Assembly (NCBI GenBank): GCA_002269645.1
Contig: NIVC01001916.1
Coordinates: 62,001 to 126,000 of the forward strand
DNA length: 64,000 nucleotides
Direction: 5' to 3'
From: Macrostomum lignano
Taxonomy: Eukaryota
Part shown: in pieces, positions 3,621-45,805 of the stretch
Numbering within the stretch: position 1 is the first letter of the stretch
How the letters are laid out: every line of letters begins with the position of its first letter
The notes under the pieces: model-generated
Seen by the model: the letters and a program-made list of their open reading frames with translations, nothing else
Told to the model about the DNA's origin: nothing
The model's database searches: none
Translations under genes and position numbers: made by a program

Positions 3621-4324
3621 TCATTCAAGTAAAAGCTGCTTTCTTATCACATGTTAGTATTTAGCGCCTTGAATCCTCGGTTGCATTTTCTCTGGATTCA
3701 GAGTTCACCCCGCGTTTCAACATAGAGACAAGGATGTAGTCTACTACAGTACATTGGTCTTTGCATCGATATAGGCCGCGTTTTGTCATTGGATACGAGC
3801 ACTTCGTGGTTTTGCGAGATTGTACTCGTGTAACTAAGTAGAAACCGGTCAGAGAAATCTTCTATTCCTGATGATAATTGCTGGTCACGTTAGACGTGCA
3901 AAAGAAAATGAGCTCGAAATGTTGATTGTTATCAATTTTAGCTACGAGTACTAAAATTTGCAAGGCACCGCGTTTACTGCTACAGTTTTGTATGCAGTTT
4001 TGTCGTTTATTCAAGAACAAAAAGCAAAAATAATTTGCCAAAATATGGGCCTAGAAGCAGAAGTCTTGAAAATACACTTACAAATAGTGTCTTGTTAGAC
4101 CTTCTACTAGTACAGTGTGTATACTCGTACGTATTCAGACGCAGTGTTGTGCAAGTGCAATCAGCATAGGTGCAACGTCATGGATTTAACCTTTGCGAAA
4201 CCATGACGGCACCAGAAGATGGGATACTCGGTTTAATGCCCTGCACCTTGGCTGCTGAAAAATAGTGGAGATTGTAAACAAAATGAGGTAACCGAACTTG
4301 ATGTGTCAGTTGATGTGTCAGATG

Positions 4325-4650
4325 GTGCGTCAGGTGAGTGGTGTATCAGGTGATTAGTGTGTCAGATCAGGTAAGTGGTGTGTCAGGTAATTGGTGTGAC
4401 AGGTGAGTGGTGTGTCAGGTGAGTGGTGTGTCAGGTGAGTGGTGTGTCAGGTGAGTGGTGTGTCAGGTGAGTGGTGTGTCAGGTGAGTGGTGTGTCAGGT
4501 GAGTGGTGTGTCAGGTGAGTGGTGTGTCAGGTAAGTGGTGTGTCAGGTAAGTGATGTGTCAGGTAAGTGATGTGCCATGTGAGTGGTGTGTCAGGTGAGT
4601 GGTGTGTCAGGTGAGTGGTGTGAGTGGTGTGTCACTTGATAGGTGTGTCA
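4325..4650. repeat. 16-bp minisatellite (GTGAGTGGTGTGTCAG), about 18 copies; same unit recurs at 23868-24027
   Basis: Direct tandem periodicity. Confidence 0.95.
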
Positions 4651-4959
4651 GTGGTAGGGGGTGTGTAAGAAACTCACGCTTTTGAGTAAGCTGTTTTCTC
4701 GAAGCTTTCATGGAATCCATCTTTTGCTGAGCTGCAAGCGGAATAATAGGGAGTTGAATTGATGTGCAGTAGTTGGCAGTTGATAGAGGCTGATATTCGC
4801 GATAAAATTCACAAAACTGATTCCGTACAGACCTTTTGCCACAATGACCTTTTCTCGGTTCTTTTCCTCTTTATGGATCTTGTCTGCAAAAATGAAAAAT
4901 CGATTTCTTAATTCCAATCTTGATTCACGGATAAGGTGGCACAGAAGCAAGGAGTGACG

Positions 4960-5545: not shown

Positions 5546-5927
5546 TAGCAAAGAATCTAGTAGGTAAAACAGATACAAGCTGAGCGTTTAATCGAATGCA
5601 GGGCTGTCTACTTACATCGCCTGTAACCGTCATAGTATGCATAGTACGGATTTAGGACGCATCCTAGTGATTCATGTACTAACTGAGGCAGCAAAACGAT
5701 GCACAGTGGTAGCAAAAAGAAATTCCAAACTTTTAGATACATTTTGCTCACTAGCGAATATACAATTGCGTGCTTAATAATCTCTTTCAAAGTTCAATGA
5801 AAATTTTTTCTTTAATTTTGTAGATTTGCTACTCACATGTACATATTAGTACTATGCCATAGACATAAGTGCGATAATATAATTCAAGGCCTAGAAAGGA
5901 ACTTTAATAAATCCATATGACAGATTA

Positions 5928-6046: not shown

Positions 6047-6149
6047 ACCCCTGAGCTCGCAGGTTGTACAGCTTCCCTGACTCTCAAATCGGCGGGCATG
6101 TACAGCCTGTGTGCCTTGGAGTTTATAAAGTAAAGCTAAAGAAAATAAA

Positions 6150-21263: not shown

Positions 21264-22530
21264 TTAAGTCTTGGCCAGCTTCATCGGCCGGGGCACGTGA
21301 CCGGCTGGCGGCTGTCTCGACTTCGGCCCCATCCGAGCGGGAACCATCGGCTGTGGCGGCGGCCGCGGCTTCGGTGGCGGCGGACGCGGCGGTGGCACCC
21401 GTTTCGGCTTCGCCTTGCCTTTCAGCTTGAACCTCAGCTCTGAAGATCGATGGGTTATACAGAGGCAGCTGCAGTGGAGATTTCCTGATGCAGTATGACA
21501 CTCGGTTGAGACTTAATTTATAACCTTTTGCATATTATTGGGGTATTATGAACCATTGTTATTGGGGTTGTAGCCAAGTGGTTTGATCGAGTGTCGGACT
21601 CACGACTGAAAGGTCGGCGGTTCGATTCTCGACCCATTTGGAACAGTTTTAGCCCTTGAGCAAGACACTTAACTCAGCATAAATATTGCTCCAGTTCACC
21701 CAGCTGTAAAATGGGTGCCAGCATTAGCTGGGGTAATTAAGGGTGTGTGAGGGGACCCCCCCCAATCCTCCTTGGACTGAACAGCCGTACGCTGCCTTCA
21801 GATGCGCCGCGCAATAGCTGCGGCTGAGCTGTCGGTTGCACATCTGCCCGTTAGGACAGGTGTAAACAATTATTATTGGGGAAACAACAGGGTATTATTG
21901 GGGTATCGGGGGGAAACAACAGGGTATTATTGGGGGTATCGAGGGAAACAGCAGGGTATTATTGGGGGTATCGAGGGAAACAGCAGGGTATTATTGGGGG
22001 TATCGAGGGAAACAGCAGGGTATTATTGGGGGTATCGAGGGAAACAGCAGGGTATTATTGGGGGTATCGAGGGAAACAGCAGGGTATTATTGGGGGTATC
22101 GGGGGAAACAGCAGGGTATTATTGGGGGTATCGAGAGAAACAGCAGGGTATTATTGGGGGTATCGGGGGGAAACAGCAGGGTATTATTGGGGGTATCGAG
22201 GGAAACAGCAGGGTATTATTGGGGGGTATCGAGGAAAACAGCAGGGTATTATTGGGGGGTATCGGGGAGAAACAGCAGGGTATTATTGGGGTATCGTGAG
22301 AAACAGCAGGGTATTATTGGGGGTAACAGGGTGAATTTTTCGAATCGATCTTTATAGCAAGCAAGGCAGAGCAGAAATGAGTTATTCAGTTAGAAAAATA
22401 TTTACAATCGGCACTCACTCGGTTTCGCAGTGACTTTCAGCAATCGCCTATGGCAAGCATCCGACTCTTCAGCGATGATTGACAGCAGGACAAGGCAGAA
22501 TAGCGGAAGAAGCTTTAATAGTAGACTCAT
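21264..22530 (-). CDS. Secreted Pro/Lys/Arg-rich cationic peptide precursor A (95 aa), 2 exons
   Basis: Exon 1 22530-22419 (ATG, donor GTGAGT, phase 1) plus exon 2 21439-21264 (acceptor cttcag, TAA) gives MSLLLKLLPLFCLVLLSIIAEESDA-CHRRLLKVTAKPKLRFKLKGKAKPKRVPPPRPPPPKPRPPPQPMVPARMGPKSRQPPAGHVPRPMKLAKT*. Manual model. Confidence 0.75.
21564..21875 (+). mobile_element. tRNA-derived SINE with a CORE/Meta-like central domain
   Basis: A box TAGCCAAGTGG (21571), B box GGTTCGATTCTC (21619), central CCCTTGAGCAAGACACTTAAC..CTGTAAAATGGG resembling the MIR CORE, (TTA)n tail; second copy at 10850-11106. Confidence 0.88.
21876..22330. repeat. 32-bp minisatellite (GGGTATTATTGGGGGTATCGAGGGAAACAGCA), about 14 copies
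   Basis: Tandem periodicity directly after the SINE tail. Confidence 0.95.
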
Positions 22531-23169
22531 TGTGCCAATTAGTGATCTTTGATCTAGCTCGATCTTGTTCACAAGCATAAAATGTAGGAACCTTACTAGA
22601 TCTGTTTGCTGAAGCAGAAGAAATTTCTCAGCTTAAACCATAGACAGAAAAATTCTACAAAAAAAACTCGGATATTGCGTGCATTTCTACTAGCAAGTAG
22701 AGTAGTTAAAATTTACATCTTTTTTAACTTACCGTTGAAAAAAGTAGAAAATTAATCAATATTGCCAAATTGACATGAAGCCAATTGCATTAATAAAAAC
22801 TGACAAAAACCACATATTACAGACTCAAAGTGCCGCATCGGGTACTTTGTACTTTTGTTTACTTTTGCAAGCGTTACTGGGGTTCGCACACCATTGCTAC
22901 TTTTGTAGGGAAACTTAATGAAAAAAGCAGTTTACTACTTTGATACTTTAGAATAGGTTATATTCTCAATACAGTAGTATATCATGCATTTTAACTAACT
23001 TCGTCTTCTATCTTATTTGATATAGTAAAAAATTGAAACCTCAGCATTTACTGCCGGTTGGATATCAGAGGGTAGTGTCAGTCTGCTAGAGTGAGTAATT
23101 AACTTTGACAGTCTCTGATGATTGACAGGTCCACAGCACATTGGGTTGCCCCCTGATTGCTCAGCTGCA

Positions 23170-25675
23170 TTACGTTACAATGTGGAGACTGTCCTGAGCT
23201 GTAAGAGTTATTTTAGGTCAGTGAATAATGCGAAGTTCCAACAAAATGGTTGCCGTGCAGTCAGTGGGGTGTCAGTGAGGTGTCAGTGCAGTCAGTAGGG
23301 TGTCAGTGCAGTCAGTGGGGTGTCAGTGGGGTGTCAGTGAAGTCAGTAGGGTGTCAGTGCAGTCAGTGGGGTGTCAGTGAAGTCAGTAGGGTGTCAGTGC
23401 AGTCAGTGCAGTCAGTGGGGTGTCAGTGCAGTCAGTAGGGTGTCAGTGCAGTCAGTGCAGTCAGTGCAGTCAGTGAGGTGTCAGTGCAGTCAGTGCAGTC
23501 AGTAGGGTGTCAGTGCAGTCAGTGGGGTGTCAGTGCAGTCAGTAGGGTGTCAGTGCGGTCAGTAGGGTGTCAGTGCGGTCAGCAGCAGAAGCACTCACAG
23601 GTTTTAAATGCTTTTGAAGAAGCTTTGTTTGCATCATCACGGGCCTTCGAAGCTGTAATGATTTTATTTTCCGAGTTTTTACTTTTACGATGCAGTTTAG
23701 TATGCAATAAAGACAAACTGTATGCGATAGACTCTAATGAAAAAAAATTTACCATCTTTAAAAGTTTTCATTGCTTTGGCACTGCCCACATTCTGGAGGT
23801 TCTTCGCCTTTTGAGCTGAAATTTTGGTAGGCAAAGGTGAGCTGTGTTACCCGAGCAGTTTGTCAGATAAGTGGTGTGTCAGGTGAGTGGTGTGTCAGGT
23901 GAGTGGTGTGTCAGGTGAGCGGTGTGTCAGGTGAGCGGTGTGTCAGGTGAGTGGTGTGTCAGGTGAGTGGTGTGTCAGGTGAGTGGTGTGTTAGGTGAGT
24001 GGTGTGTCAGGTGAGTGGTGTGTCAGGGGATTTGTGTGCCGGTTCTAGTTTTTGAGGAATCAAGTCTTGAAATCGCAAATAGCCCCAGCTGTCTCACTTT
24101 TTTTGAAGGCCTTGGCTTTAGCGGCGTTCTCAGCCAACCGGGCTTTGTGGGCTGCAGGAAAACAAAATTAAGGGTGTCGGTGCAATTAGTGAAGATGTCA
24201 GGCGGATTAAGTAGGGTGTCGCTAAAACTAGTTAGGATTTTGAACTAGAGTTAGACACGTTTTCTCAAGATATGCAAAAGAAATTACCTTTATTGAAATT
24301 TTTCATAACTTTATGGCTGCCCAAATTATTTGTACGAGGCGCTGAAAAATAAAAATACTGGTTCACTAAGTTTAAAGATAGCTTTGAAATATTGATAGAA
24401 GTAGAATGATTTTATGGTAGAAAAGCCAGTAGGGAGTGACACCCAGGACGCATTCAAATAACACAGTAATCAGTGGAGTGACACAGGAGTCAATGGAGTG
24501 ACACAGGAGTCAATGGAGTGACATAGTAATCAGTGGAGTGACACAGGAGTCAATGGAGTGACATAGTAATCAGTGGAGTGACACATGAATCAGTGGAGTG
24601 ACACAGGAGTCAATGGAGTGACATAGTAATCAGTGGAGTGACACAATAATCAGTGGAGTGACACAGGAGTCAGTGGAGTGACATAGTAATCAGTGGAGTG
24701 ACACATGAATCAGTGGAGTGACACAAGAGTCAGTGGAGTGACACAGGAGTCAATGGAGTGACATAGTAATCAGTGGAGTGACACATGAATCAGTGGAGTG
24801 ACACAGGAGTCAGTGGAGTGACACAGGAGTCAATGGAGTGACATAGTAATCAGTGGAGTGACACATGAATCAGTGGAGTGACACAGGAGTCAATGAAGTG
24901 ACACAGGAGTCAGTGGAGTGACACAGGAGTCAATGGAGTGACATAGTAATCAGTGGAGTGACACAATAATCAGTGGAGTGACACAATAATCAGTGGAGTG
25001 ACACAGGAGTCAGTGGAGTGACATAGTAATCAGTGGAGTGACACAACAATCAGTGGAGTGACACAGGAGTCAGTGGAGTGACATAGTAATCAGTGGAGTG
25101 ACACATGAATCAGTGGAGTGACACAAGAGTCAGTGGAGTGACACAGGAGTCAATGGAGTGACATAGTAATCAGTGGAGTGACACATGAATCAGTGGAGTG
25201 ACACAGGAGTCAGTGGAGTGACACAGGAGTCAATGGAGTGACATAGTAATCAGTGGAGTGACACATAATCAGTGGAGTGACACATGAATCAGTGGAGTGA
25301 CACAGGAGTCAGTGGAGTGACACAGGAGTCAATGGAGTGACATAGTAATCAGTGGAGTGACACAGGAGTCAGTACAGTGACACAGTAATCAGTGGAGTGA
25401 CACAGGAGCCAGTGGCCGGGGTGACACAGGAGCCAGTGGCCGGGGTGACACAGGAGCCAGTGGAGTGACACAAGAGTCAGTAGAGTAACACAGGAGTCAG
25501 TGGAGTGACACAAGAGTCTGTGGAGTGACAGAGCAGTGTACTGAACCAGCAGCAACTTACCTTGCTTAAATCGCTTTAATCCTTTCGGGCAGGCAGACGT
25601 CAGAGTGGCATCTTCCATGAGCAGGATGAGCACAACAGTTGACAGTATAGAGATGCATCCTGTTTTGTGCAACAT
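23170..25675 (-). CDS. Secreted Lys/Ala-rich cationic peptide precursor B (83 aa), 4 exons
   Basis: Exons 25675-25561, 24151-24098 (54 bp), 23652-23599 (54 bp) and 23198-23170, all phase 1 with GT-AG ends, give MLHKTGCISILSTVVLILLMEDATLTSA-CPKGLKRFKQAHKARLAENAAKAKAFKKTSKARDDANKASSKAFKTSQDSLHIVT*. The last exon is the least certain. Confidence 0.72.
23255..23582. repeat. GTCAGTGCA/GTCAGTGGGGT compound minisatellite (intronic)
   Basis: Tandem periodicity. Confidence 0.92.
23868..24027. repeat. 16-bp minisatellite (GTGAGTGGTGTGTCAG), intronic
   Basis: Same unit as 4325-4650. Confidence 0.93.
24440..25535. repeat. 20-bp minisatellite (AGTGGAGTGACACAGGAGTC and variants), about 53 copies with higher-order patterning
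   Basis: Tandem periodicity; fills intron 1 of peptide B. Confidence 0.96.
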
Positions 25676-26043
25676 TTTCGCAAGTCAACTTCAACTATAT
25701 TGAATTTCAACTGACCTTTCTGGTTTATCAAATTCGGTTTCTTGCGCAACAGATCGATAATATTTAAGAGTCGAAAGCGATTTAAAAAGTAATTCCGTAC
25801 TTTCACCCTGCATATATTGCGAGCATGTGCTTGGACATAAAATAGAATACTAATAAATAAAGGTTTGCAGCTTCTGCAGCGGCTATTTGTCTATGTGTGA
25901 AAGTACGGCATTCTGAGCTTCTTGTGATGCTGGTGCTTGTCTATGGCTAGGACCAAAAAAATCGAGCTTCTGGCGATCCTGTTATGTTATTCATCCATGG
26001 TCAAAACCTAAAGTGCCATAGACAAAATCATGGTGGAGACTTT

Positions 26044-27646
26044 CGGTTAACAGTAGAAAGACCATGGGGGTGTATTTCAAATACACACATTTTTCTTTTG
26101 TCTGGATCTCCGAGAATATTCAACCAATTGCCATCAAAATCCAGAACACGGGCTAAAATTTTCCGCTCTATTCGACGAAGCAACTCTGAGAATCACGAAA
26201 AATCGGCATCGTTGAGATATTCAACGATTCTCCTCGGGGTGTCCGGTGGCAAAAACCACCAACATTGGCAAATTTTTTCTGTTCACAAAATCTCATCTTG
26301 AAACCACGTCGGCTCAGGAAACTATGCATATAAGTCGTAAAGGCCTTTCTTCTCAGCATCCCAGGAACCAGGGTCCCCTTCATCACTGTCTGGAGCATCG
26401 GCGGCGACCGTCAGGACCTTCAAAAAAAGCATCCGATCGGCATCGCAGAGACGGCTGCGTTCCCAAAACTGAAATGGAAGAATCCTCTTCTGCATTCAGC
26501 GTTCAGTCAGCAGACATAATCGGTGAATGAAATGGACGACGGCGACCCTCTAGGTTGACCTGTAGACATACAAGCGACCTTCGGGACCTTCAACGGAGTG
26601 CCACCATGCGGCCCCGACTAGCTGGCATCCCCAACATCGTGAATTTTCTGTCAAGGCACCAAACCAGGCATGTCTGCATGTTATACAGTGGTCCTGCACC
26701 ATGTTCAGCATTCAGCTCTGTCTGGACGACCTCCGGCACCTTCAACGGAATGCCACCACGCGGCCCCGACTAGCTGGCATCCCCAACATCGTGAATTTTC
26801 TGTCAAGGCACCAAACCAGGCATGTCTGCATATTACACAGTGGTCCTGCACCATGTTCAGCATTCAGCTCTGTCTGGACGACCTCCGGCACCTTCAACGG
26901 AATGCCACCACGCGACCCTGACGAGCGAACACTCCCAACATCGTAATCTGTAACTCTCCAATTTAACATGGTGGAAAAGCATTGTATAATATGCAAACAT
27001 GCCTGGTTTGGTGCCTTGATAGAAAGAGCAGGATGTTGGCGTTGGCGGTGTCAGCTCATCGGGGCCGCGTGGTGGCACTCCGTTGAAGGTCCCGAAGGTC
27101 GCCTGTGTGTCTACAGGTCAGCCTAGAGGGTCGCCATCATCCGTTTCATTCACCGATTATGTCTGCTGACTGAATGTTGCATGCAGAAGAGGATTCTTCC
27201 GTTTCAGTTTTGGAAACGCAGCCGTCTCTGCGATGCCGATCGGATGCTTTTGTTGAAGGTCCTGACGGTCGCCGCCGATGCTCCAGACGGTGATGAAGGG
27301 GACCCTGGTTCCTGGGATGCTGAGAAGAAAGGCCTCTCCGACAGATGGACCCAGATTATTGAGCCAATATAGATTCACCATAAAGGTTTATACAGTGTAG
27401 TGTTGGTTGTCCTTGCCACCAGTGTCTTCGACAAGAATCGTTGAATATCTCGACGATGCTGACGTCGGATGACTTTGAAAGTTAATTCGTTGGAAAGGGG
27501 GGGGAATTTTGATCCAAATGGTGGACTTTTACGAAAATTGGTTATTCGGTTTGCGAGCTATGGTGAAATTGGTTGTGTGTATTTGTAATACACCCCCATG
27601 GTCTTTCCCCATGGGGAAAATAGCGTGGTCTTTCTACTGTTAACCG
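26044..27646. mobile_element. Foldback-type element: about 1.6-kb imperfect palindrome with an internal 152-bp tandem duplication in the left arm
   Basis: Ends CGGTTAACAGTAGAAAGACCA / TGGTCTTTCTACTGTTAACCG; inverted homology of 26340-26700 with 27030-27340 and of 26200-26230 with 27430-27460; centre near 26960; CCTTCAACGG recurs at 26587, 26739 and 26891. No TSD or transposase recognised. Confidence 0.8.
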
Positions 27647-28295
27647 CATAGGTTTATTGCTTTAACTACTTTTAAAATTTTAAAATCTGGATTGGAAAGA
27701 ATGCTAGAGAACTAACTAACTACCTAACTAAAGAGCTTTTTTGATGAGTTGCCCTTATATAATCCTCAGAGATATTTAACTCTTGTAAGAGGTAAGTACT
27801 TGAAGACTTGAATTACTTGAGGTAAACACGTATTGTTAAATCACATCACCAGAGGTAAACTACTTGCAGTAATATTATAAACAATAATTGAACTCGAAAA
27901 TAAGAAGAAACAAAAATCATTTTAAAGTTTGTAAGTGTTATCTGATTATACTCATCTGTGCAAAGTATATTTGTTATACAAAGAAAAAGCCTAAAAAGTT
28001 TAAAAAAAGTTTTCTATTGCTATGTAAATCTGTGAAAAAAACTTGGCTTATGTACACTGCACTGCATGTTTAACAAGGACCACAGATACAAGAAGAGCTA
28101 TAGATATTCACTCGCAAAAAAGAGGTCGTCTACACGGTCCACTCTTTTCAGTAGATATTTGCGTTTGTGCCTAAAATAAATTGTCTTACCGACTCCAGAC
28201 TGCCAGGCATAAGCGAGTAAGAGAAAAGGCTGATAAGACAGTTTGACTTTCCCCTTGCCCGCTTGCGGCCGACTTTGACCTCTTCTCCTTACTGC

Positions 28296-28445
28296 TCTCT
28301 CATTGGCTGAGCTAGATTGGGCCTGCCGTAGACTGAATTTCGTCCGTTTATCTTTGACCTCTCTCATTGGCTGAGCCAGATTGGGCCTGCCCTAGACTGA
28401 ATTTCGTCCGTTTATCTTTGACCTCTCTCATTGGCTGAGCCAGAT
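28296..28445 (-). promoter_or_regulatory. 64-bp tandem repeat (about 2.3 copies) rich in CCAAT boxes; possible promoter
   Basis: CATTGGCTGAGC at 28301, 28365 and 28429, with a second ATTGG in the complete units; a minus-strand donor G|GTAAGA follows at about 28189. Confidence 0.4.
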
Positions 28446-28919
28446 GGGGCCTTCCCGCTGCTGCCCGCTCGAGTGTACATCGAGTTAAATGCTTGCTATT
28501 CATTCTTAACCCTATAAGCTTAATGAGGCCGCAAACCCAGAGGAAGGAAAAAAATTAGCTGCCACATTATATTTAAAAGACACTGCGCAAACAAACTACT
28601 GACAAAGAGTAGACGCTCTACTTTTTTCACAAGTTTATTTGGGATTGATACAAGTATATCTAGTAATTCTAGCGTCTGTGATTATGACCAAGTGCCTATT
28701 TGTATACACAATATTTCTGTAAAATTAATACTGTAACCCGCTTAATACTGTAGGTTTTTGCGACCAAATAAATATTTGAACTGCAGAAGGTCTGTTTATC
28801 TTAGCTGTGCTGTAGTGTACAACAACGTGGCGGTAGAAAGATACTATTCATTATTTGCTGACAAACTGTTGACGCAGTGAAAAGTAGCGAGTGATGTCAG
28901 CTAGGACTCAGTTGATTCT

Positions 28920-31543
28920 CTAAGCGCCAACTGCAAGTTTTTACGGGGAAAATTTATTAGGTGAGAACGTGAATTTTCCTGATTTTCAGAACTATTTTTA
29001 CATTAGGTGTGTCAGGATTCAGGACTAGTTTCTAAAATGTGTCAGGACTAGTTACTCAAATGTGTCAGGACTAGTTTATAAAACTTGTCAGGACTAGTTT
29101 CTGAAATGTGTCAGGACTAGTTACTCAAACGTGTCAGGACTAGTTTATAAAACGTGTCAGGACTAGTTTATAAAACTTGTCAGGACTAGTTTCTGAAATG
29201 TGTCAGGACTAGTTACTCAAACGTGTCAGGACTAGTTTATAAAACTTGTCAGGACTAGTTTCTGAAATGTGTCAGGACTAGTTTATAAAACGTGTCAGGA
29301 CTAGTTTATAAAACGTGTCAGGACTAGTTTATAAAACGTGTCAGGACTAGTTTATAAAACGTGTCAGGACTAGTTTATAAAATGTGTCAGGACTAGTTTA
29401 TAAAACGTGTCAGGACTAGTTTATAAAACGTGTCAGGACTAGTTTATAAAACGTGTCAGGACTAGTTTATAAAACGTGTCAGGACTAGTTTATAAAACGT
29501 GTCAGGACTAGTTTATAAAACGTGTCAGGACTAGTTTATAAAACGTGTCAGGACTAGTTTATAAAACGTGTCAGGACTAGTTTATAAAACGTGTCAGGAC
29601 TAGTTTATAAAACGTGTCAGGACTAGTTTATAAAACGTGTCAGGACTAGTTTATAAAACGTGTCAGGACTAGTTTATAAAACGTGTCAGGACTAGTTTAT
29701 AAAACGTCAGGACTAGTTTATAAAACGTGTCAGGACTAGTTTATAAAATGTGTCAACTCATCACAATTTTCTAATCGAGCCCACTTACCTTTAACGGAGC
29801 CAGCAGAAGGAACTGGAATTATGATGATGTTTGGGATTAATTAATTAATAAATTGTTGGGATAGCATGCATTTCGGAATGCAGTAAGTTAAAATTCACTC
29901 ATAAGTCACTCACCCCCAGAGCTGAGAATTTTTGCGCTAGGAGCCTTTTGGGTTCTCCCTGAGGCCTTTGCCGCGGCTCTTCCAAACTTGGATTGGTGCA
30001 GTTTTGTCATCTCGGATTTTTCGACTGAAGAAATAATTATGAGCATTGAGGGGCTTTGAGATAGAATCTGAGATAATCTACGAAAATATTTCAAAAAGTG
30101 GGTGTCAGACAGATTGGGTGTCAGACAGATTGGGTGTCAGATAGATTGGGTGTCAGACAGATTGAATGTCAGACAGATTAGGTGTCAGACAGATTGGGTG
30201 TCAGATAGATTAGGTGTCAGACAGATTGGGTGTCAGATAGATTGAATGTCAGACAGATTGGGTGTCAGATAGATTGAATGTCAGACAGATTAGGTGTCAG
30301 ACAGATTGGGTGTCAGACAGATTGGGTGTCAGACAGATTGAATGTCAGACAGATTAGGTGTCAGACAGATTGGGTGTCAGATAGATTGGGTGTCAGACAG
30401 ATTGAGTGTCAGACAGATTGAGTGTCAGACAGATTGGATGTCAGACTGATTGGGTATCAGATAGATTGAATGTCAGACTGATTGGGTATCAGATAGATTG
30501 GGTATCAGATAGTTTGGGTGTCAGACAGATTGAGTGTCAGACAGATTGGATGTCAGACTGATTGGGTGTCAGATAGATTGGATGTCAGACAGATTGGGTG
30601 TCAGACAGATTGGGTATCAGATAGATTGGATGTCAGACAGATTGGGTGTCAGACAGATTATATGTCAGAATGTTGGCTCAATGTTGGAAATTTTAGCTCA
30701 TTGTAATACGTGAAGGATCATAACAGTGAAAACATGAGTATAATGATAAAATTGATATACTTACAATTTTTAAATTTTCTAAAAGCCTTGTTACCCTTCA
30801 GGACGCTTCTTTTGTAAACTGAAAAAATTGTAAGAGGATAATTTTTTTAGTATAACATTGAAAAGAAATTTGAAGGCGCTGTGTACAGTACATTGAGGTG
30901 TTTGTGGTGTGTCTCGGAAGACATTGAGGTGTTTGTGGTGTGTCTCGAAAGACATTGAGGTGTCTGTGGGGTCTCGGAATATATTGAGGTGTCTCAGAAG
31001 ACATTAGAGGTTTGTTTGTGGGGTGTCTCGGAAGACATTGAGGTGTCTGTGGTGGGTCTCGGAAGACATTGAGGTGTCTGTGGTGGGTCTCGGAAGACAT
31101 TGAGGTGTCTCAGAAGACATTAGAGGTTTGTTTGTGGGGTGTCTCGGAAGACATTGAGGTGTCTGTGGTGGGTCTCGGAAGACATTGAGGTGTCTCAGAA
31201 GACATTAGAGGTTTGTTTGTGGGGTGTCTCGAAAGACATTGAGGTGTCTGTGGGGGGTCTCGGAAGACATTGAGGTGTCTCCTAAGACATTGAGGTGTCT
31301 TTGTGGGGTGTCTCAGAAAACATTTTTAGGTGTCTATGTGGGGTGTCTCAGAAAAAATTGAGGTGTCTGTGTGGGGGGTGTCTCAGAGTATTATTAAAAG
31401 GCAAAGCAACGCCACAGGTGAGATAACTTACGATTTTTGACGCCTCTCAGAGCCGCCCTGCAGGTGGAGCCGTTCTCTGTCCAGCACAGAAGCAGAAACA
31501 GGCAAACGAGCAGCAGCAGTTTCGAAAAAACGCACAATGACAT
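28920..31543 (-). CDS. Secreted Lys/Ser/Ala-rich cationic peptide precursor C (about 93 aa), 5 exons including two 24-bp microexons
   Basis: Exons 31543-31432, 30818-30795 (24 bp), 30024-29914 (111 bp), 29812-29789 (24 bp) and 28930-28920, all phase 1, give MSLCVFSKLLLLVCLFLLLCWTENGST-CRAALRGVKNLYKRSVLKVEKSEMTKLHQSKFGRAAAKASGRTQKAPSAKILSSGVPSAGSVKVGA*. The terminal exon is uncertain. Confidence 0.7.
29005..29755. repeat. 23-bp minisatellite (GTGTCAGGACTAGTTTATAAAAC), about 32 copies
   Basis: Tandem periodicity. Confidence 0.97.
30100..30665. repeat. 16-bp minisatellite (TCAGACAGATTGGGTG), about 35 copies
   Basis: Tandem periodicity. Confidence 0.96.
30890..31385. repeat. About 31-bp compound minisatellite (GTGTCTCGGAAGACATTGAGGTGTCTGTGG)
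   Basis: Tandem periodicity. Confidence 0.92.
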
Positions 31544-32430
31544 TTTTGGGCTTGAAGCTGCGACCTTAAACACTGACTTTCAGCACTTCACTTTTCAACT
31601 TGCCATAATCCGTTATTTTTTTCTATATTCAAAATAAATCTTTTTCAAAGGGCTGCGAGTTGGGCCATAGACGAAAAAGTAAAACAATTAAGCGTTGAAA
31701 TCTTGGAAGTGTTCGATGCGCGTCACAAAACATCGGCAAGCAGCGTGCATTTTAATAAAAGTACATCATTATATTTTTAACAACAAAACTAACATAGACT
31801 GAAATAGTTCAATAAAAGCGGAAATAGCTATTAAAAACTTATAATATTCGAGCACCTTAGTTTGAAAAAGACGATATGTATTGAAAAATACTTTGTAAGC
31901 CAGGGCAGCTGCTGCAAAAAATGACACAAAAGCGACTGCTTTCCAAAGCCGATATGTATAGAAAATTACTACTTCAAGGAGGGAAGCTGCAAAATTTAGA
32001 AATAAACAAATATATAAAATACTATAGAACACCGCCTAAGAAGCCGTGCACACGTGTATTAAGACAAATACACCGAAAGTATGTAATTACTATAAAAGTA
32101 AATTTTACAGAATAGCACATTTATTGTAAAAGTACGCTCCAAGAAATTTAGCACAATACGGGACATTTTGTAGAAAAGTACAAAAGTACACTTTCACTAA
32201 AAGTACATTTCATAGAAAACTACATTTCTTTGAAAGGTTAAATGTATATAAAAGTACATTTCTTCAAAATTAAACCTAACGTAAAAGTACATTTCTTCAA
32301 AATTAAACCTAACGTAAAAGTACATTTCGTAAAAAATAGTTTTTTAAAAGTACACTTTTATTAAAAGTACATTTCGTTAGTTTTGTAAAAGTACACTTTT
32401 AATAAAAGTACATTTCGTAAAAAGTTAAAT

Positions 32431-33083: not shown

Positions 33084-36000
33084 AGTGGCCGTGGCCTCTG
33101 CCTGCCTACCGGAGCACCTGTGCAGCCTGGCAGCAGACGCGAACACTCCGTGACCCTGCGGACAGTGGAAGTACCTTCGCCCCTCCACGGATCCGTCATT
33201 TCTGCCCACCGCGTTGTCCAGCTCCACCCCGTACCAAACTCCCGGGGCGAAGTGGCACTCGCCAACGAACCGGACGGTGCCTCGACGTTGGCCGGCTACG
33301 ATCACTCGGTCGCCGAGGGCGAAACTGTGCCGGGTTCGAACCCGGGCCTCCACGCCGCTGACGTCGATTGCGCCGCGATGGACCCGGGTGAAGCCGGACA
33401 CGCGGCTCATGGGGACCAGCACCTGGCCGGGTCGGACACGGGGTCGGACACTTAATTCCTGGACTCTTGATTCCTGATAACCAATTCTCGGACACCATTC
33501 CTGAACACTTCATTCCCGGACTCTCCTTTCCTGGACACTTCATTCTTAGACACTCCATCTTTAAACACTTCATTCCCGGACACTTCATTCCCGGACACTT
33601 CATTCCCGGACACTTCATTCCCGGACACTTCATTCCCGGACGCTTCATTCCTCCAGACATTTAATTCCCGGACAGTGCGGACACTTCATTCCCGGACACT
33701 TCATTCCCAGAATCTTCATTCCCAGACTCTCCATTTCTTCGGACGCTTTATTCCTGGAAATTTAATTCCCGGACATTTAATTCCCGGACACTTAATTCCC
33801 GGACACTTCATTCCTGGACACTTCATTCCTACGGACACTTCATTCCCGGACACTTCATTCCTAGACACTTCATTCCTAGACACTTTATCTTCAGACCCTC
33901 CATTCCCGGACACTCACCCCCGGCCAGCCGGACACTGGAAGTATCTGACTCCGGACACGCAACCGTCGTGTCGGCCAGCCTGCGGCGTCTCGAGTTCAAC
34001 TCCGGCCCAGACGCCTGGCGCGAATTCCACGGGGCCCCAGTAGCGGAGGGTGCCGGGCCGGGACCCAGCAACCAGGACTCGGTCGCCCAAGTTGGAAGGC
34101 GGCTGATCGGCTTGCTGCTGCGGTCTCTGCTGCGGCTGCCGCTGTGACTGCTGCTGCTGCTTCTGCAGTGCAGCCGCCTGATGTGTGATCAGAAGCGATA
34201 ATTAGGATGATTCTTAGGGGATAATTGGGAAGATTCTTAGGTTATAATTAGGAAGATTCTTAGGGAATAATTATGGTGATACTTAGGGGATAATTAGGGA
34301 GATTCTTAGGGGGTAATTAGGAAGATTCTTAGGGGATAATTAAGGGTGATTGCGCCTTAATTTTTGTCCTTATTGTCATTAGGGGACAATTAGGAAGATT
34401 ATTAGGGGATAATTATAGGAAGATTCTTAGGGGATAATTAGGAAGCATCTTAGGGGATAATTAGGAAGCATCTTAGGGGATAATTAGGAAGCATCTTAGG
34501 GGACAATTAGGAAGTTTATTAGGGGATAATTATAGAAAGATTCTTAGGGGATAATTAGGAAGCATCTTAGGGGATAATTAGGAAGCATCTTAGGGGACAA
34601 TTAGGAAGATTCTTAGGGGATAATTAGGGAAATTGTAAGGGGATAATTAGAGAGATACTTGGGGGTTATTTAGAGAGATTCTTAAGGGATAATTAGGGCG
34701 ATTCTTAGAGAACAGTTAGGAAGATTTTTAGGGGATAATTAGGAATATACTTAGAGGATGATTAGGAATATTATTAGGGGACAATTAGGAAGATTCTTAG
34801 GAAATAATTAGGAAGATTCTTAGGCGATGAGTAGGGAGACTCTTAGAGGATAATTGGGGGTAGAATCTTAGGGGATAACAAGGGGATAACTAGGGAGATT
34901 CTTAATACATCCAACTAAACGTGCTTCCCAGTGAAAGAAGAGGAGTGAAAGGCAAAGGCAAGGGAAGTCCAACCTCTTCAAACGCTGACGAAGCCACCGA
35001 AGCGGTTGATGAAGCGGACGACAGCGGAGCTGCAGCCGCGGCAGCCGGCACCGAAGCGGTGGACGAAGCGGACAGCCGAGGCGGTCGCTCAGGCCGACTG
35101 CCAGCCAGTAAAGTGAGCAGTCTCGATCGGATCTCTCGATTCTCAGCCGAAGAGTTCGAGTTGAACAAACCAGAGGTCAGTTGAGGCAGGCAGTCGACGG
35201 GACGCCGGAGCAACTCGTCTGTGGCTGCCAGAGCTGCCTGACCTGCGCTGGAGACCAGCAGGCGGGCGCTGCCTTCGCTCAGGTGTGCAGCGGCCAGGTG
35301 CAGCGGGGTGGCGTCTTCGAACTCGGTGCATCTGATTGTGAAAGAGGGCATGAATTGTTAAAGAGTCGGTTCTGAGTTCGAACTCTATTATGACCGTTTA
35401 CTATGAGTATGTTTGTACTTTAGTCTATGACCGGTTTCTATGAGTATGTTTCTACTTTAGTCTATGACCGGTTCTATGAGTATGTTTGTACTTTAGTCTA
35501 TGACCGGTTTCTATGAGTATGTTTGTACTTTAGTCTATGACCGGTTTACTATGAGTTTGATTGTACTTAGTCTATGAAAGGTTTCTATGAGTTTGTTTGT
35601 ACTTTAGTCTATGGCTGGTTTTTGAGTTTGTACTTTAGTCTATAGCTGTTTTCTGAGTTTATACTTTAGTCTATGGCTGTTTTCTGAGTTTGTATTTTAG
35701 TCTATGGCTGGTTTTTAAGCTTGTACTTTAGTCTATGGCTGGTGTTTGAGTTTGTACTTTAGTCTATGGCTGGTTTTTAAGCTTGTACTTTAGTCTATGG
35801 CTGGTTTCTGAGTTTGTAATTTAGTCTATGGCTGGTTTCTGAGTTTGTAATTTAGTCTATGGCTGGTTCTGAGTTTGTACTTTAGTCTATGGCTGGTTTC
35901 TGAGTTTGTACTTTAGTCTATGGCTGGTTTTTTAGTTTGTACTTTAGTCTATGGCTGTTTTCTAAGTTTGTACTTTAGTCTATGGCTGGTTTTTAAGCTT

Positions 36001-37553
36001 GTACTTTAGTCTATGGCTGGTTTTTGAGTTTGTACTTTAGTCTATGGCTGGTTTTTAAGCTTGTACTTTAGTCTATGGCTGGTTTCTGAGTTTGTAATTT
36101 AGTCTATGGCTGGTTTCTGAGTTTGTAATTTAGTCTATGGCTGGTTTCTGAGTTTGTAATTTAGTCTATGGCTGGTTTCTGAGTTTGTAATTTAGTCTAT
36201 GGCTGGTTTCTGAGTTTGTAATTTAGTCTATGGCTGGTTTCTGAGATTGTACTTTAGTCTATGGAGGTTGCCAAAGTGACCCCCACTAACCTAGCCAATG
36301 GATCAGCCCCGGCCTCTAGCAGAACTTCCACCGCCTCTTGACAGTTGAACATTGTCGCCAGGTGCAACGGGGTTACGTCTGTCCACCGACTGCGCGCCTC
36401 AGGCTGAGCCCCAGCCAAGAGAAGTCCGCGCATGGCGTTGGCCGCCGCGGAGGGACTCGCCAACGCACCGCATTTTGCCGCAAAATGAAGCTGAGCAAAG
36501 TCGGTCACCTTGATGCGGTGGCAATACAGGAAGTCAGTCTTCCTTTAAGGCGGCCGAACTATTTATAGATTTTGTTGCCAGTGGTGATTTCAGTGGGGTG
36601 CCAGGGGATTTCAGTGGGGTGTCAGGGGGTTTCAGTGGGGTGTCAGGGGGTTTCAGTGGGGTTTCAGTGGGGTGTCAGGAGGTTTCAGTGGGGTGTCAGG
36701 GGGTTTCAGTGGGGTGTCAGGGGGTTTCAATGGAGTGTCAGGGGGTTTCAATGGAGTGTCAGGGGTTTTAATGGAGTGCCAGGATGTTTCAGTGGGGTGT
36801 TAGGGGATTTCAGTGGGGTGTCAGGAGATTTCAATAGGTGTCAGGGGGTTTCAATGGAGTGCCAGGAGGTTTCAGTGCGGTGTTAGGGGATTTCAGTGGG
36901 GTGTTAGGGCATTTCAGTGGTGTTAGGGGATTTCAGTGGGTGTCAGGTGATTTCAGTGGGGTGTCAGGAGATTTTTTCAGTGGGGTATCAGGGGTGATTT
37001 CGGTGGGGTGTCAGGGGTTTAAATGGAGTGTCAGGAGGTTTCAGTGGGGTGTCAGGGGTGATTTCGGTGGGGTGTCAGGGGGTTTAAATGGAGTGTCAGG
37101 AGGTTTCATTGGGGTGTCAGGGGTGATTTCAGTGGGGTGCCAGGGGATTTCAGTGGGGTGTCAGGGGGTTTCAGTGGGTGTCAGGGGAGTAAGAAAATAC
37201 ACTGGGGTATCAGTTAGAAAAATTGAAATTATGTCAACAAGAAAGCCAGTAAAAGTACACGCTTTTCAACACAGACAAAAGCACTAAAAAGTAAGATAAA
37301 CAATATCAAATCATCGACTCACTTGATCACGATCGTTTGGTCCAACGCCTAGCTCAGCCAGACGGTCAACTATCTCAGGCAGCAGCTGCTGGGCAGGTCG
37401 GGTCCATTGGCGAATCAGGGCGAATAGCTGATTAGGAGTTGCCACCTCCAGCTGCTGGGAGCAGCCTGAGCACTGCAGATCGAATAGCTCCGCTCCAAGG
37501 GACTGGCATCTTGAGCAGAGGGGTGCCAGAACACTCTCATAGATTTGGAACTC
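32431..37553 (-). CDS. CLIP4: CLIP3/CLIP4 (CLIPR-59/RSNL2)-like protein: ankyrin repeats plus three CAP-Gly domains; first exon not found
   Basis: Exons 37553-37323, 36508-36291, 35331 to about 34974, 34177-33918, about 33422-32970 and 32670-32431. NDRDQVTDFAQLHFAAKCGA..RSRWTDVTPLHLA matches the CLIP3/4 ankyrin region, and there are three GTVRF.G..FA.GVW.GVEL....G.NDG...G.RYF.C CAP-Gly motifs. CLIP3 versus CLIP4 cannot be distinguished. The 33918/33422 junction needs either an alternative acceptor or a 1-bp homopolymer correction. Confidence 0.88.
33455..33915. repeat. 15-bp minisatellite (CCGGACACTTCATTC), CLIP intron
   Basis: Tandem periodicity. Confidence 0.93.
34200..34900. repeat. About 23-bp degenerate minisatellite (TTAGGGGATAATTAGGAAGATTC), CLIP intron
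   Basis: Tandem periodicity. Confidence 0.92.
35390..36262. repeat. About 31-bp minisatellite (TAGTCTATGGCTGGTTTCTGAGTTTGTACTT), CLIP intron; mirrored at about 48466-49338
   Basis: Tandem periodicity. Confidence 0.94.
36585..37195. repeat. GGGGTGTCAG/GTTTCAGT compound minisatellite, CLIP intron; mirrored at about 47533-48143
   Basis: Tandem periodicity. Confidence 0.93.
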
Positions 37554-38922: not shown

Positions 38923-38992
38923 TTTCTAGAAATTTCTTGAATCAATTAAATGACACAATTTCGAGAAATTTCCCCCGGGCAGTCTTTATAAA
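38923..38992 (+). promoter_or_regulatory. Heat-shock promoter: 4-unit HSE, 3-unit HSE and TATA box
   Basis: tTTCtaGAAatTTCttGAAt (38923-38942), tTTCgaGAAatTTCc (38959-38973) and TATAAA (38987-38992), about 115 bp upstream of the sHSP ATG. Confidence 0.92.
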
Positions 38993-39107
38993 CAAGACAG
39001 GCTGCTTCTCGAACAGACAAGCTCCTAAATCAAGAAAGCGAGAGCAAAACACAAGCAAAAGCAAAGCAAGCAAACCAAACAAACCAGCAGACATTCTACA
39101 AGCGACA

Positions 39108-45621: not shown

Positions 45622-45736
45622 TGTCGCTTGTAGAATGTCTGCTGGTTTGTTTGGTTTGCTTGCTTTGCTTTTGCTTGTGTTTTGCTCTCGCTTTCTTGAT
45701 TTAGGAGCTTGTCTGTTCGAGAAGCAGCCTGTCTTG

Positions 45737-45805
45737 TTTATAAAGACTGCCCGGGGAAATTTCTCGAAATTGTGTCATTTAATTGATTCAAGAAATTTCT
45801 AGAAA
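45737..45805 (-). promoter_or_regulatory. Mirrored HSE + TATA promoter of the second sHSP copy
   Basis: TTCaaGAAatTTCtaGAA at 45786-45805; TATAAA on the minus strand at 45737-45742. Confidence 0.9.

What the first reader, a model, noticed from the sequence alone, without database searches (positions are those of the whole stretch)
21264..31543. Hidden tandem cluster of three secreted cationic peptide genes sharing a signal-peptide + Cys exon-1 blueprint
Seen: three same-strand genes, mostly invisible in the ORF track because their exons are short and separated by minisatellite introns. Each exon 1 is 112, 115 or 112 nt and ends in phase 1. Each encodes a hydrophobic signal peptide with acidic residues just before the predicted cleavage site (EESDA, EDATLTSA, TENGST), then a single Cys and a basic stretch. 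The mature parts (about 70, 55 and 66 aa; net charge about +21, +11 and +13 by hand count) are otherwise unrelated: one Pro-rich, one Ala/Lys helical, one Lys/Ser-rich. Inference: a fast-evolving family of antimicrobial, mucus/adhesive or seminal-fluid peptides that keeps a shared secretion module and N-terminal Cys (possibly for dimerisation or lipidation) while swapping the payload. I recognise no known family for it.
Basis: partly seen in the sequence, partly recalled or inferred. Interest (0 to 1): 0.85.

Follow-up and report, generated by a model that had tools for sequence, protein, structure and literature searches.

The report
Flatworm cluster of secreted cationic peptide genes
This stretch of the flatworm Macrostomum lignano genome holds a tandem cluster of four (not three) small genes for secreted, strongly positively charged peptides found only in this animal; they are real, and at least one is missing from every annotation searched, but their function (most likely defence or gland secretion) is untested.

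Summary
The window is Macrostomum lignano contig NIVC01001916.1. On the minus strand lie three GT-AG gene models whose first exons are exactly 112, 115 and 112 nt, end in phase 1, and encode a hydrophobic signal sequence, an acidic/small c-region, one Cys and a basic tail. My independently built 6-exon model of the middle gene is 100% identical to the RNA-seq-derived GenBank protein Mlig016063 (122 aa). A fourth member lies at 5742-4178; its junctions match UniProt A0A1I8GQE9. Such first exons occur 4 times versus 0.04 expected. Corrections: genes 2 and 3 are longer than stated (mature 94 and 85 aa, both +19). The payloads are not unrelated: genes 2, 3 and 4 share 18-residue phase 1-1 exon modules carrying a K-A-F-K motif, and gene 2 arose by duplication of a two-exon cassette. 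All four have GTCTATGG upstream. No homologue exists outside M. lignano in 5.8 or 1.8 billion proteins, and no Pfam family matches. UniRef's "ribosomal protein L29" name is unsupported. Older gene models skip exons and even join gene 2 to gene 1's terminal exon, so combinatorial splicing is possible. Function is inferred only: extracellular polycations, probably host-defence or gland products. Moderate interest; a new member of a known kind.

The parts
22419..22530 (-). Gene 1 exon 1 (112 nt, phase 1): MSLLLKLLPLFCLVLLSIIAEESDA|CHRRLLKVTAKP
   Evidence: ORF identical in paralogous copies L002 and L003
21264..21439 (-). Gene 1 exon 2 (terminal, Pro-rich, includes stop)
   Evidence: same acceptor and frame used in UniRef model A0A1I8I613 (P0004)
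25561..25675 (-). Gene 2 (Mlig016063) exon 1 (115 nt, phase 1): signal sequence ...EDATLTSA|CPKGLKRFKQ
24288..24341 (-). Gene 2 exon 2 (54 nt, phase 1-1 module)
24098..24151 (-). Gene 2 exon 3 (54 nt, phase 1-1 module)
   Evidence: retained in isoform models P0003 and P0004
23753..23815 (-). Gene 2 exon 4 (63 nt, phase 1-1 module; duplicate of exon 2)
23599..23652 (-). Gene 2 exon 5 (54 nt, phase 1-1 module)
23170..23198 (-). Gene 2 exon 6 (coding part, ends in TAA)
   Evidence: annotated gene span 2506 nt equals 25675-23170
31432..31543 (-). Gene 3 exon 1 (112 nt, phase 1): MSLCVFSKLLLLVCLFLLLCWTENGST|CRAALRGVKN
   Evidence: intact in L002 with 1 aa change
30765..30818 (-). Gene 3 exon 2 (54 nt, phase 1-1 module with KAFRKFKN)
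29914..30024 (-). Gene 3 exon 3 (111 nt, phase 1-1; corresponds to two fused modules)
29789..29812 (-). Gene 3 exon 4 (24 nt, phase 1-1; inferred)
   Evidence: PSAGSV aligns with PSSGAV of gene 4
28941..28978 (-). Gene 3 exon 5 (coding part with stop; inferred)
   Evidence: AATAAA 302 nt downstream
5616..5742 (-). Gene 4 exon 1 (127 nt, phase 1): MYLKVWNFFLLPLCIVLLPQLVHESLG|CVLNPYYAYYDGYRR
4833..4883 (-). Gene 4 exon 2 (51 nt, phase 1-1)
   Evidence: junctions match P0005
4678..4731 (-). Gene 4 exon 3 (54 nt, phase 1-1)
4178..4254 (-). Gene 4 exon 4 (terminal, with stop)
   Evidence: AATAAA 167 nt downstream
22638..22645 (-). GTCTATGG motif 108 nt upstream of gene 1 ATG
26016..26023 (-). GTCTATGG motif 341 nt upstream of gene 2 ATG (a + strand copy lies at 25939-25946)
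31665..31672 (-). GTCTATGG motif 122 nt upstream of gene 3 ATG
5857..5864 (-). GTCTATGG motif 115 nt upstream of gene 4 ATG
23861..24038 (.). 16-nt minisatellite (TGTCAGGTGAGTGGTG) in gene 2 intron 3; same unit as 4323-4622 in gene 4 intron 3
4323..4622 (.). 16-nt minisatellite in gene 4 intron 3 (same unit as in gene 2 intron 3)
24461..25530 (.). 20-nt minisatellite filling 88% of gene 2 intron 1. Other intronic arrays: 21879-22325, 23255-23582, 29019-29755, 30099-30659, 30890-31387, 4967-5548

Best explanation
A tandem, same-strand cluster of four paralogous, Macrostomum-restricted genes, each encoding a small secreted polycationic peptide of about 8-10 kDa. Each gene starts with its own exon that carries a cleavable signal sequence and ends in phase 1 just after the cleavage region. 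Cleavage is predicted directly before the one conserved Cys, so the mature peptide would begin with Cys followed by a basic stretch. The rest is assembled from short symmetric (phase 1-1) exons, mostly 18-residue Lys/Ala modules carrying a K-A-F-K motif. These modules multiplied by exon-cassette duplication. Gene 1 instead carries one Pro/Lys/Arg-rich terminal exon. Shown: gene structures, paralogy, transcript support for gene 2, independent annotation support for gene 4 and for gene 1's exon 2, and absence of any known family. Inferred: secretion, the cleavage site, and the mode of action. The proposed action is that the peptides work outside the cell by electrostatic binding to polyanionic targets, with the free N-terminal Cys giving disulfide-linked dimers. 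My preferred target is microbial surfaces (host-defence peptides). Confidence is about 0.85 for the gene-family description and about 0.35 for the host-defence role.
For: Gene models close with GT-AG and all 13 introns are phase 1. Gene 2 equals the transcript-derived GenBank protein PAA62608.1 at 100% over 122 aa. Gene 4 equals UniRef A0A1I8GQE9 from residue 22 to the stop. Gene 1 exon 2 is used in the same frame in A0A1I8I613. The exon-1 pattern occurs 4 times versus 0.04 expected. Hydrophobic cores score Kyte-Doolittle 3.0-3.6 over 11 residues, and residues at -3/-1 before the Cys are small in all four: S/A, T/A, G/T, S/G. Mature-part similarity against shuffles: g2-g3 z=3.8, g2-g4 z=3.1, g3-g4 z=6.3. 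The module motif occurs 4 times versus 0.07 expected. Cassette duplication has z=8 and the alignment extends into the intron. GTCTATGG lies upstream of all four ATGs in sense orientation. Genes 2 and 4 share a 16-nt intron minisatellite unit. Mature peptides have pI 10.1-12.0, net charge +11 to +21 and a single Cys. AlphaFold predicts two long helices in gene 2 with block-mean pLDDT up to 90. Hydrophobic moment is significant for gene 3 exon 2 (0.58, p=0.017). ORFs are intact in the paralogous copies.
Against: There is no transcript evidence for gene 3 or for gene 1's exon 1. Both are absent from the RNA-seq-based GenBank annotation and from 15 billion proteins, although that annotation discarded transcripts overlapping repeats. 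No SignalP run was possible. At 70-94 residues and 27-35% hydrophobic residues, the peptides are longer and more hydrophilic than classical helical antimicrobial peptides. Several modules have no amphipathic moment. No anionic propiece or dibasic processing site of the kind seen in myticalins or cathelicidins is present. Exon and non-coding divergence between copies is equal (0.4 vs 0.3%, and 0.7 vs 0.8%), so no constraint is demonstrated. Tissue of expression is unknown.
Confidence: 0.5

Rival explanations
1. Same gene family, but the products are structural or functional components of a gland secretion: adhesive, cement or shell-gland material, mucus or rhabdites. The Lys-rich polycations would bind polyanionic glycans or surfaces. 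In gene 4, the Tyr-rich N-terminus would serve quinone/DOPA-type cross-linking.
For: M. lignano adhesion relies on extremely Lys/Arg-rich regions of Mlig-ap1, and free positively charged peptides alter detachment (PMC6410801). Gene 4 mature starts CVLNPYYAYYDGYRRYK, with 6 Tyr in the first 16 residues, next to Lys. The peptides are hydrophilic and long for membrane-active peptides.
Against: Genes 1-3 have 0-1 Tyr. The known adhesive proteins are very large multidomain proteins (KR regions alone exceed 3,600 aa), not 8-10 kDa peptides. There are no expression data.
Confidence: 0.22
2. Same gene family, but the products are seminal-fluid (prostate gland) peptides transferred at mating.
For: Putative M. 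lignano seminal fluid proteins have been sought by a targeted in situ screen that considered signal peptides (PMC5977470), and reproduction-related genes evolve rapidly in the genus (PMC7336406); both. This family has no detectable homologue.
Against: Mlig016063 does not appear in the parts of the stored reproduction-related tables that could be searched, but those tables are truncated, so this is weak. It is also absent from the germline/neoblast lists.
Confidence: 0.1
3. Not four independent genes but one or two complex transcription units. Alternative signal-peptide first exons and freely skippable phase 1-1 exons are joined in different combinations, including across the gene 2/gene 1 boundary, to give a repertoire of peptides.
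For: UniRef A0A1I8GNM7 equals gene 2 exons 1+3+6. A0A1I8I613 equals gene 2 exons 1+3 plus gene 1 exon 2. Every exon is phase-compatible with every other. Only 640 nt separate the gene 2 stop from the gene 1 ATG, and no canonical AATAAA lies between them; the only ATTAAA in that stretch is inside gene 1 exon 1. M. lignano transcriptional units often contain several genes (PMC5730564).
Against: These two models come from the older assembly's proteome and may be ab initio predictions or artefacts of collapsed repeats. The transcript-based GenBank model is the plain 6-exon gene 2 in all three copies. Each gene has its own ATG, signal exon, stop and upstream GTCTATGG motif.
Confidence: 0.15
4. Only genes 2 and 4 are functional. 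Gene 3 and the first exon of gene 1 are untranscribed relics of duplication.
For: They are absent from the transcript-based annotation and from all protein collections. There is no measurable excess constraint on exons.
Against: ORFs, start codons, all splice sites and stops are intact in every available copy. There are no gap columns in 1,825 aligned exon bases against 56 in 8,772 non-coding bases. Both carry the upstream motif. Gene 1 is 95 aa; my recollection is that TransDecoder's default minimum ORF is 100 aa, and the paper read here does not state the cut-off used. Repeat-overlapping transcripts were filtered out of the GenBank set.
Confidence: 0.12
5. The proteins are intracellular basic proteins related to ribosomal protein eL29, as UniRef's name suggests.
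For: UniRef names A0A267EM70, A0A1I8GNM7 and A0A1I8I613 '60S ribosomal protein L29'. The composition is Lys/Ala-rich.
Against: No Pfam Ribosomal_L29e hit even at E<=1. No eL29 chain among all PDB ribosome structures at E<=10. An N-terminal hydrophobic signal sequence is present. The exhaustive phmmer search found no eL29.
Confidence: 0.01

Closest known systems
Mlig016063 (GenBank PAA62608.1, PAA88972.1, PAA62839.1; UniRef A0A267EM70) and A0A1I8GQE9, uncharacterised M. lignano proteins
   Same: Gene 2 is this protein (100%, 122 aa). Gene 4 is A0A1I8GQE9 from residue 22 onward.
   Different: The database entries are isolated 'hypothetical' or mis-named records. The clustering, the family relationship, gene 3 and the gene 1 first exon are not recorded anywhere I could search.
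Myticalins/modiocalins of mussels (taxon-restricted linear cationic antimicrobial peptide families)
   Same: A multigene, taxon-restricted family. The signal sequence is better conserved than the strongly cationic mature region, which can be Pro/Arg-rich (as in gene 1). A phase-1 intron is present (PMC5577615).
   Different: Myticalins encode signal plus mature peptide in one exon, followed by a Lys-Arg site and an anionic C-terminal propiece. Here the mature part is split into many phase 1-1 exons, there is no anionic propiece, the peptides are 70-94 aa, and there is a conserved +1 Cys. No sequence similarity was detected. Antimicrobial activity is untested.
Mlig-ap1 KR-regions (M. lignano adhesive/cohesive protein)
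   Same: Same organism; secreted; extreme Lys/Arg content; function through charge interactions with polyanions (PMC6410801).
   Different: Mlig-ap1 is a giant multidomain protein with C-type lectin and von Willebrand D domains and more than 3,600 aa of KR regions. These genes encode 95-122 aa precursors with no domains.
Single-Cys disulfide-dimerised helical peptides (e.g. dicynthaurin, halocidin of tunicates) and N-terminal-Cys acylated secreted proteins (Hedgehog, Spitz) - recalled from memory, a lead only
   Same: One Cys in a cationic secreted peptide. The Cys is predicted at position +1 after signal cleavage, followed by basic residues (CHRR, CPKGLKR, CRAALR).
   Different: No sequence relationship. 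Neither dimerisation nor acylation can be tested here. Gene 4's Cys is followed by CVLNPYY, with no basic residue in the next 13 residues.
General rule of phase-1 introns after signal-peptide exons and 1-1 symmetric exon shuffling in metazoan secreted proteins (Patthy and co-workers; established knowledge)
   Same: The first exon ends in phase 1 shortly after the cleavage site, and all internal exons are 1-1, allowing duplication and skipping without frame loss.
   Different: The modules here are unusually small (18 residues). Nine of 13 introns are ~100-nt-class introns expanded by a minisatellite.

Membership tests
Mlig016063 transcript cluster (M. lignano hypothetical protein) | Sequence identity to PAA62608.1 / A0A267EM70 | tested here: met
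   Gene 2 model is 100% identical over 122/122 aa. The window is the same contig.
Ribosomal protein eL29 (Pfam PF01779), the name carried by UniRef | Match to the Ribosomal_L29e profile or to eL29 chains of solved ribosomes | tested here: not met
   No Pfam hit at E<=1. No eL29 chain in the PDB at E<=10. No eL29 in the exhaustive phmmer search.
Ribosomal protein eL29 | Cytosolic protein without a signal sequence | tested here: not met
   N-terminal hydrophobic core with Kyte-Doolittle 3.0 over 11 residues, followed by small residues at -3/-1.
Secreted protein with cleavable signal peptide | n-region, hydrophobic h-region of 10 or more residues, c-region obeying the -3/-1 rule | tested here: met
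   All four: h-region KD 3.0-3.6; -3/-1 are S/A, T/A, G/T, S/G before the Cys. This is heuristic only; SignalP is not available.
Proline-rich antimicrobial peptides (Bac7/PR-39/apidaecin/myticalin type) - considered for gene 1 | High Pro plus Arg/Lys content in the mature peptide | tested here: met
   Gene 1 mature: Pro 29%, Lys 17%, Arg 13%, net +21, pI 12.0.
Proline-rich antimicrobial peptides | Precursor with a conserved pro-region (cathelin or anionic extension) and a processing site | tested here: not met
   The mature part has no acidic residue and no anionic extension. No Pfam cathelicidin hit.
Proline-rich antimicrobial peptides | Demonstrated antibacterial activity or ribosome/DnaK targeting | not testable with these tools
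   Needs a peptide assay.
Linear amphipathic alpha-helical cationic antimicrobial peptides - considered for genes 2 and 3 | Helical propensity with a significant hydrophobic moment | tested here: inconclusive
   AlphaFold predicts helices 45-83 and 87-121 in gene 2. Moment is significant for g3 exon 2 (0.58, p=0.017) and marginal for g2 exons 2 and 5 (p about 0.05), but absent in g2 exon 3, g3 exon 3 and gene 4.
Linear amphipathic alpha-helical cationic antimicrobial peptides | Typical size (about 12-50 aa) and about 40-60% hydrophobic residues (from general knowledge) | tested here: not met
   70-94 aa and 27-35% hydrophobic residues. The exon-skipped form P0003 would be 37 aa and 41%.
Hedgehog/Spitz-type N-terminal Cys acylation substrates | Cys at +1 after signal cleavage with nearby basic residues | tested here: inconclusive
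   Predicted for genes 1-3 by the -3/-1 rule. The cleavage site is not verified, and gene 4 lacks nearby basic residues.
Hedgehog/Spitz-type N-terminal Cys acylation substrates | Actual N-palmitoylation by an MBOAT acyltransferase | not testable with these tools
   Needs mass spectrometry.
Mlig-ap1-like adhesive proteins | Giant protein with KR regions plus C-type lectin and vWD domains | tested here: not met
   Precursors are 95-122 aa and no domains are found. Description of Mlig-ap1 from PMC6410801.

The most novel reading that the evidence does not exclude
The locus is a combinatorial peptide generator. Four promoter plus signal-exon units and at least ten freely interchangeable phase 1-1 payload exons are spliced in varying combinations. 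Examples are the exon-skipped model 1+3+6 and the cross-gene model joining gene 2 exons 1+3 to gene 1's Pro-rich exon. The result would be a repertoire of N-terminal-Cys polycationic peptides that can further pair through their single Cys. The minisatellite-filled introns, most of which carry repeated CTGAC branch-point-like cores on the sense strand, might influence which exons are used or how fast the cluster rearranges.
Probability: 0.1. Interest if true: 0.7.

Novelty: new member of a known kind. Interest (0 to 1): 0.4.

Why it matters
Effector peptides of free-living flatworms are almost uncharted, as far as I know. M. lignano is a flatworm model in which transgenesis is established (PMC5730564; RNAi knockdown is also in routine use, PMC6410801), so a compact four-gene family of secreted polycations can be tested directly for defence, adhesion or reproductive roles. 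The case also exposes annotation gaps. Genes 1, 3 and 4 are missing from GenBank, and the family is mis-named as ribosomal protein L29 in UniRef. It gives a clean example of how 18-residue phase 1-1 exons let a secreted peptide grow by cassette duplication. None of this overturns current understanding: taxon-restricted clusters of secreted cationic peptides with a conserved signal exon are common in invertebrates.

Tried and rejected
(1) Looking up the neighbouring small heat-shock gene to identify the source: not on record. The identity came from gene 2 itself.
(2) Selection test using the paralogous/allelic contigs L002 and L003: they differ by less than 1% and exon and non-coding divergence are equal, so there is no power.
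(3) Homologues outside M. lignano: none with gene 2 (word-indexed search; exhaustive phmmer over 1.84 billion representatives), gene 3 or a four-gene profile.
(4) Pfam gave only sub-threshold chance hits: PRIMA1, Uteroglobin, CRPV_capsid, DivIC.
(5) The eL29 identity was rejected.
(6) Expression data: 'Mlig016063' occurs in no searchable main text. It is absent from the supplements of PMC5816591, PMC12732829 and PMC7336406, but the relevant tables of the last are truncated in the store. Two further papers have no stored supplements.
(7) Rfam and ARAGORN find nothing in the window, so the tRNA-like stretch in gene 1's intron is not a scored tRNA.
(8) DNA-level similarity among the four first exons is not above shuffles, so paralogy rests on architecture, protein similarity, the upstream motif and a shared minisatellite unit.
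(9) Neuropeptide-precursor reading: considered and dropped, because there are no repeated G-K/R amidation/cleavage units.
(10) The method behind the older proteome models (P0003, P0004, P0005) could not be checked, because the source paper is not in the library.

Full report
**What the window is.** Composition, dense minisatellites, retroelement fragments and split genes mark the window as animal DNA. The gene 2 protein I assembled by hand hit a GenBank protein of the flatworm Macrostomum lignano at 100% identity. The contig holding that gene, NIVC01001916.1 of assembly GCA_002269645.1, is identical to the window over 20.7 kb. Two further contigs (L002, L003) carry copies 95-99% identical overall and less than 1% diverged in unique sequence. 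This fits the redundancy reported for this assembly and the recent genome duplication in the species (PMC5730564; PMC10468722).

**Checking the observation.** All the genes lie on the minus strand. Reading from each ATG, the first exons are 22530-22419 (112 nt), 25675-25561 (115 nt) and 31543-31432 (112 nt).
- Each is followed by GTGAGT or GTAAGT and ends after the first base of a codon.
- Each encodes a hydrophobic core (Kyte-Doolittle 3.0-3.6 over 11 residues), an acidic/small stretch (EESDA, EDATLTSA, TENGST), then a Cys preceded by small residues at -3 and -1, then a basic tail.
- A formal scan for this pattern finds four sites in the 128 kb of both strands, all on the minus strand, against 0.04 in block shuffles. 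The pattern was defined after seeing the genes, but the margin is large.

Full models:
- Gene 1: 2 exons, 95 aa.
- Gene 2: 6 exons (115, 54, 54, 63, 54 and 29 coding nt), 122 aa.
- Gene 3: 5 exons (112, 54, 111, 24, 38), 112 aa.
- All introns are GT-AG and phase 1.

Genes 2 and 3 are longer than it thought: mature 94 and 85 aa, both +19.

**Independent support for the models.**
- Gene 2 equals PAA62608.1/PAA88972.1 (Mlig016063) residue for residue. The GenBank annotation was derived from genome-guided RNA-seq assembly (PMC5730564), so its five junctions have transcript support.
- A fourth candidate emerged from the scan at 5742-4178. A profile search returned UniRef A0A1I8GQE9, which is identical to my model from residue 22 to the stop across all three junctions.
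- The N-terminus of A0A1I8GQE9 is the same exon read in another frame. This is either an indel artefact of the older assembly or a variant copy.
- Gene 1's Pro-rich exon is used, with the same acceptor and frame, in UniRef A0A1I8I613.
- Gene 3 and gene 1's first exon appear in no annotation or protein collection.
- That absence is weak evidence. Transcripts overlapping repeats were removed from the GenBank set, and gene 1 is only 95 aa.
- Their ORFs and splice sites are intact in every available copy.

In fact:
- Mature parts of genes 2, 3 and 4 align better than composition-matched shuffles (z = 3.8, 3.1, 6.3).
- The internal exons are 18-residue units of the form [A/T]xKA[R/K]...N...[S/A]KA[F/M]Kx(FKx).
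- The motif K[AV][FM][KR] occurs once in each of gene 2's four internal exons and in gene 3's exon 2, always 5 or 8 residues from the exon end. That is four in gene 2 against 0.07 expected.
- Within gene 2, exon 2 plus the start of intron 2 aligns to exon 4 plus the start of intron 4 (56 nt, z = 8). Short and array-bearing introns alternate. So gene 2 grew by duplicating a two-exon cassette.
- Gene 3's 111-nt exon corresponds to two fused modules.
- Gene 1's payload is not similar to the others. Its signal region does resemble those of genes 3 and 4 (z = 2.7, 3.8).
- All four genes carry GTCTATGG in sense orientation upstream of the ATG, at -108, -341, -122 and -115. Only 8 non-array copies exist in the window, against 1.3 expected for the whole window including arrays.
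- Genes 2 and 4 also share the same 16-nt minisatellite unit in the corresponding intron.
- In the four-way alignment, the invariant residues beyond Met and the signal-core Leu residues are the Cys and two Lys.

**What it is not.**
- UniRef calls these proteins '60S ribosomal protein L29'. There is no Ribosomal_L29e Pfam match even at E = 1, no eL29 chain among all solved ribosomes at E = 10, and the proteins have signal sequences. The name is a compositional artefact.
- Nothing outside M. lignano matches in 5.8 billion or 1.84 billion proteins.
- Rfam and tRNA scans are empty.

**One locus or four genes?** The exhaustive search returned a 65-aa UniRef protein that is exactly gene 2 exons 1+3+6. 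Its cluster mate is gene 2 exons 1+3 joined to gene 1's terminal exon. Because every exon is phase 1-1, all such joins stay in frame. The gene 2 stop and the gene 1 ATG are only 640 nt apart, with no AATAAA between them, and M. lignano makes multi-gene primary transcripts. These models may be prediction artefacts of the older assembly. I could not check how they were made. I therefore treat combinatorial splicing as an open rival at about 0.15, not as shown.

**How it probably works.**
- Shown: four precursors of 95-122 aa.
- Predicted by rule: cleavage immediately before the Cys, giving mature peptides of 70-94 aa, pI 10.1-12.0, net +11 to +21, with exactly one Cys at position 1.
- Gene 2 is predicted to form two long helices (block-mean pLDDT up to 90, single-sequence AlphaFold). 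Gene 3's exon-2 module is clearly amphipathic. Gene 1 is 29% Pro, like Pro/Arg-rich antimicrobial peptides.
- Inferred: they are extracellular polycations acting by electrostatic binding, and the conserved lone Cys most simply gives disulfide dimers. N-terminal acylation is a less likely alternative.
- I favour host defence (about 0.35), by analogy with taxon-restricted cationic families such as myticalins (PMC5577615).
- However, the peptides are longer and more hydrophilic than classical membrane-active peptides. M. lignano also uses Lys/Arg-rich secreted protein in adhesion (PMC6410801), and gene 4's Tyr-rich start suggests cross-linking chemistry. A gland-secretion role (about 0.22) or a seminal role (about 0.10) are real rivals.
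- No expression data could be retrieved. The tables that hold them are truncated in the store.

**Verdict.** Two of the four proteins are already in databases as uncharacterised or mis-named entries. The family as such, gene 3, and the complete gene 1 (its first exon) are, as far as I could search, undescribed. This is a new member of a familiar kind of system: lineage-specific clusters of secreted cationic peptides with a conserved signal exon. It has a neat modular exon architecture and an open question about combinatorial splicing. Interest is moderate (0.4).

Noticed in passing
window 35161-41833 and 42896-49567: A perfect (100% complementary) 6.7-kb inverted repeat with a 1,062-nt spacer. 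It duplicates a two-domain small heat-shock protein gene (39108-39905 + / 44824-45621 -), a 192-aa ORF and several minisatellites. Perfect identity suggests an assembly palindrome (a long-read artefact) or a very recent inverted duplication.
   Followed up: partly
window 4323-4622, 5921-6047, 23255-23582, 23861-24038, 29019-29755, 30099-30659, 36611-37187 (GTGTCA on +); 4967-5548, 24461-25530 (GTGACAC on +): Minisatellites with different periods (16, 20, 21, 23 nt) share a GTGTCAG / GTGACAC core. Their G-rich strand is always the + strand, so in most of them (those with GTGTCAG on the + strand) the sense strand of the peptide genes carries repeated CTGAC, a branch-point-like sequence. This suggests a common origin or a common expansion mechanism.
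   Followed up: partly
introns of genes 1-4 (table): Array-free introns are 100-136 nt. Eight of the nine array-bearing introns have only 72-179 nt of non-array sequence (gene 1's has 532 nt). The ancestral introns therefore look about 100 nt long and were later inflated up to about 10-fold by tandem arrays. In genes 2 and 4, inflated and plain introns alternate.
   Followed up: partly
window 35595-36264 (+) and 48464-49317 (-), also 41061 and 43661: The upstream motif GTCTATGG of the peptide genes is also the core of a 31-nt minisatellite (GTTTGTACTTTAGTCTATGGCTGGTTTCTGA) in the neighbouring ankyrin/CAP-Gly gene region. There are 50 copies in the window against 1.3 expected.
   Followed up: no
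window 26334-27342: Between genes 3 and 2 lies a foldback-like element: inverted arms about 90% complementary, with a 152-nt tandem repeat (26575-26944).
   Followed up: no
window 21556-21640: A tRNA-like (SINE-like) segment inside gene 1's intron. Neither ARAGORN nor Rfam scores it.
   Followed up: partly
window 6799-7567 (+) and 2541-3399 (-): Retroelement fragments (integrase-like ORFs on the + strand; reverse-transcriptase-like tail on the - strand) flank gene 4. Identified by eye only.
   Followed up: no
window 8980-10788 (-): A 602-aa open frame rich in Ser/Arg/Lys/Asp, with internal 42-nt repeats (9140-9384). It gives no Pfam family above threshold. It may belong to a gene downstream of the annotated PLAT-domain gene.
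   Followed up: no
UniRef A0A1I8GQE9 versus window 5742-5680: The older-assembly protein has a non-hydrophobic N-terminus that is the +2 frame of the window's gene 4 exon 1. Two compensating indels therefore separate the two versions. This is either a sequencing error or a copy that has lost its signal sequence.
   Followed up: partly
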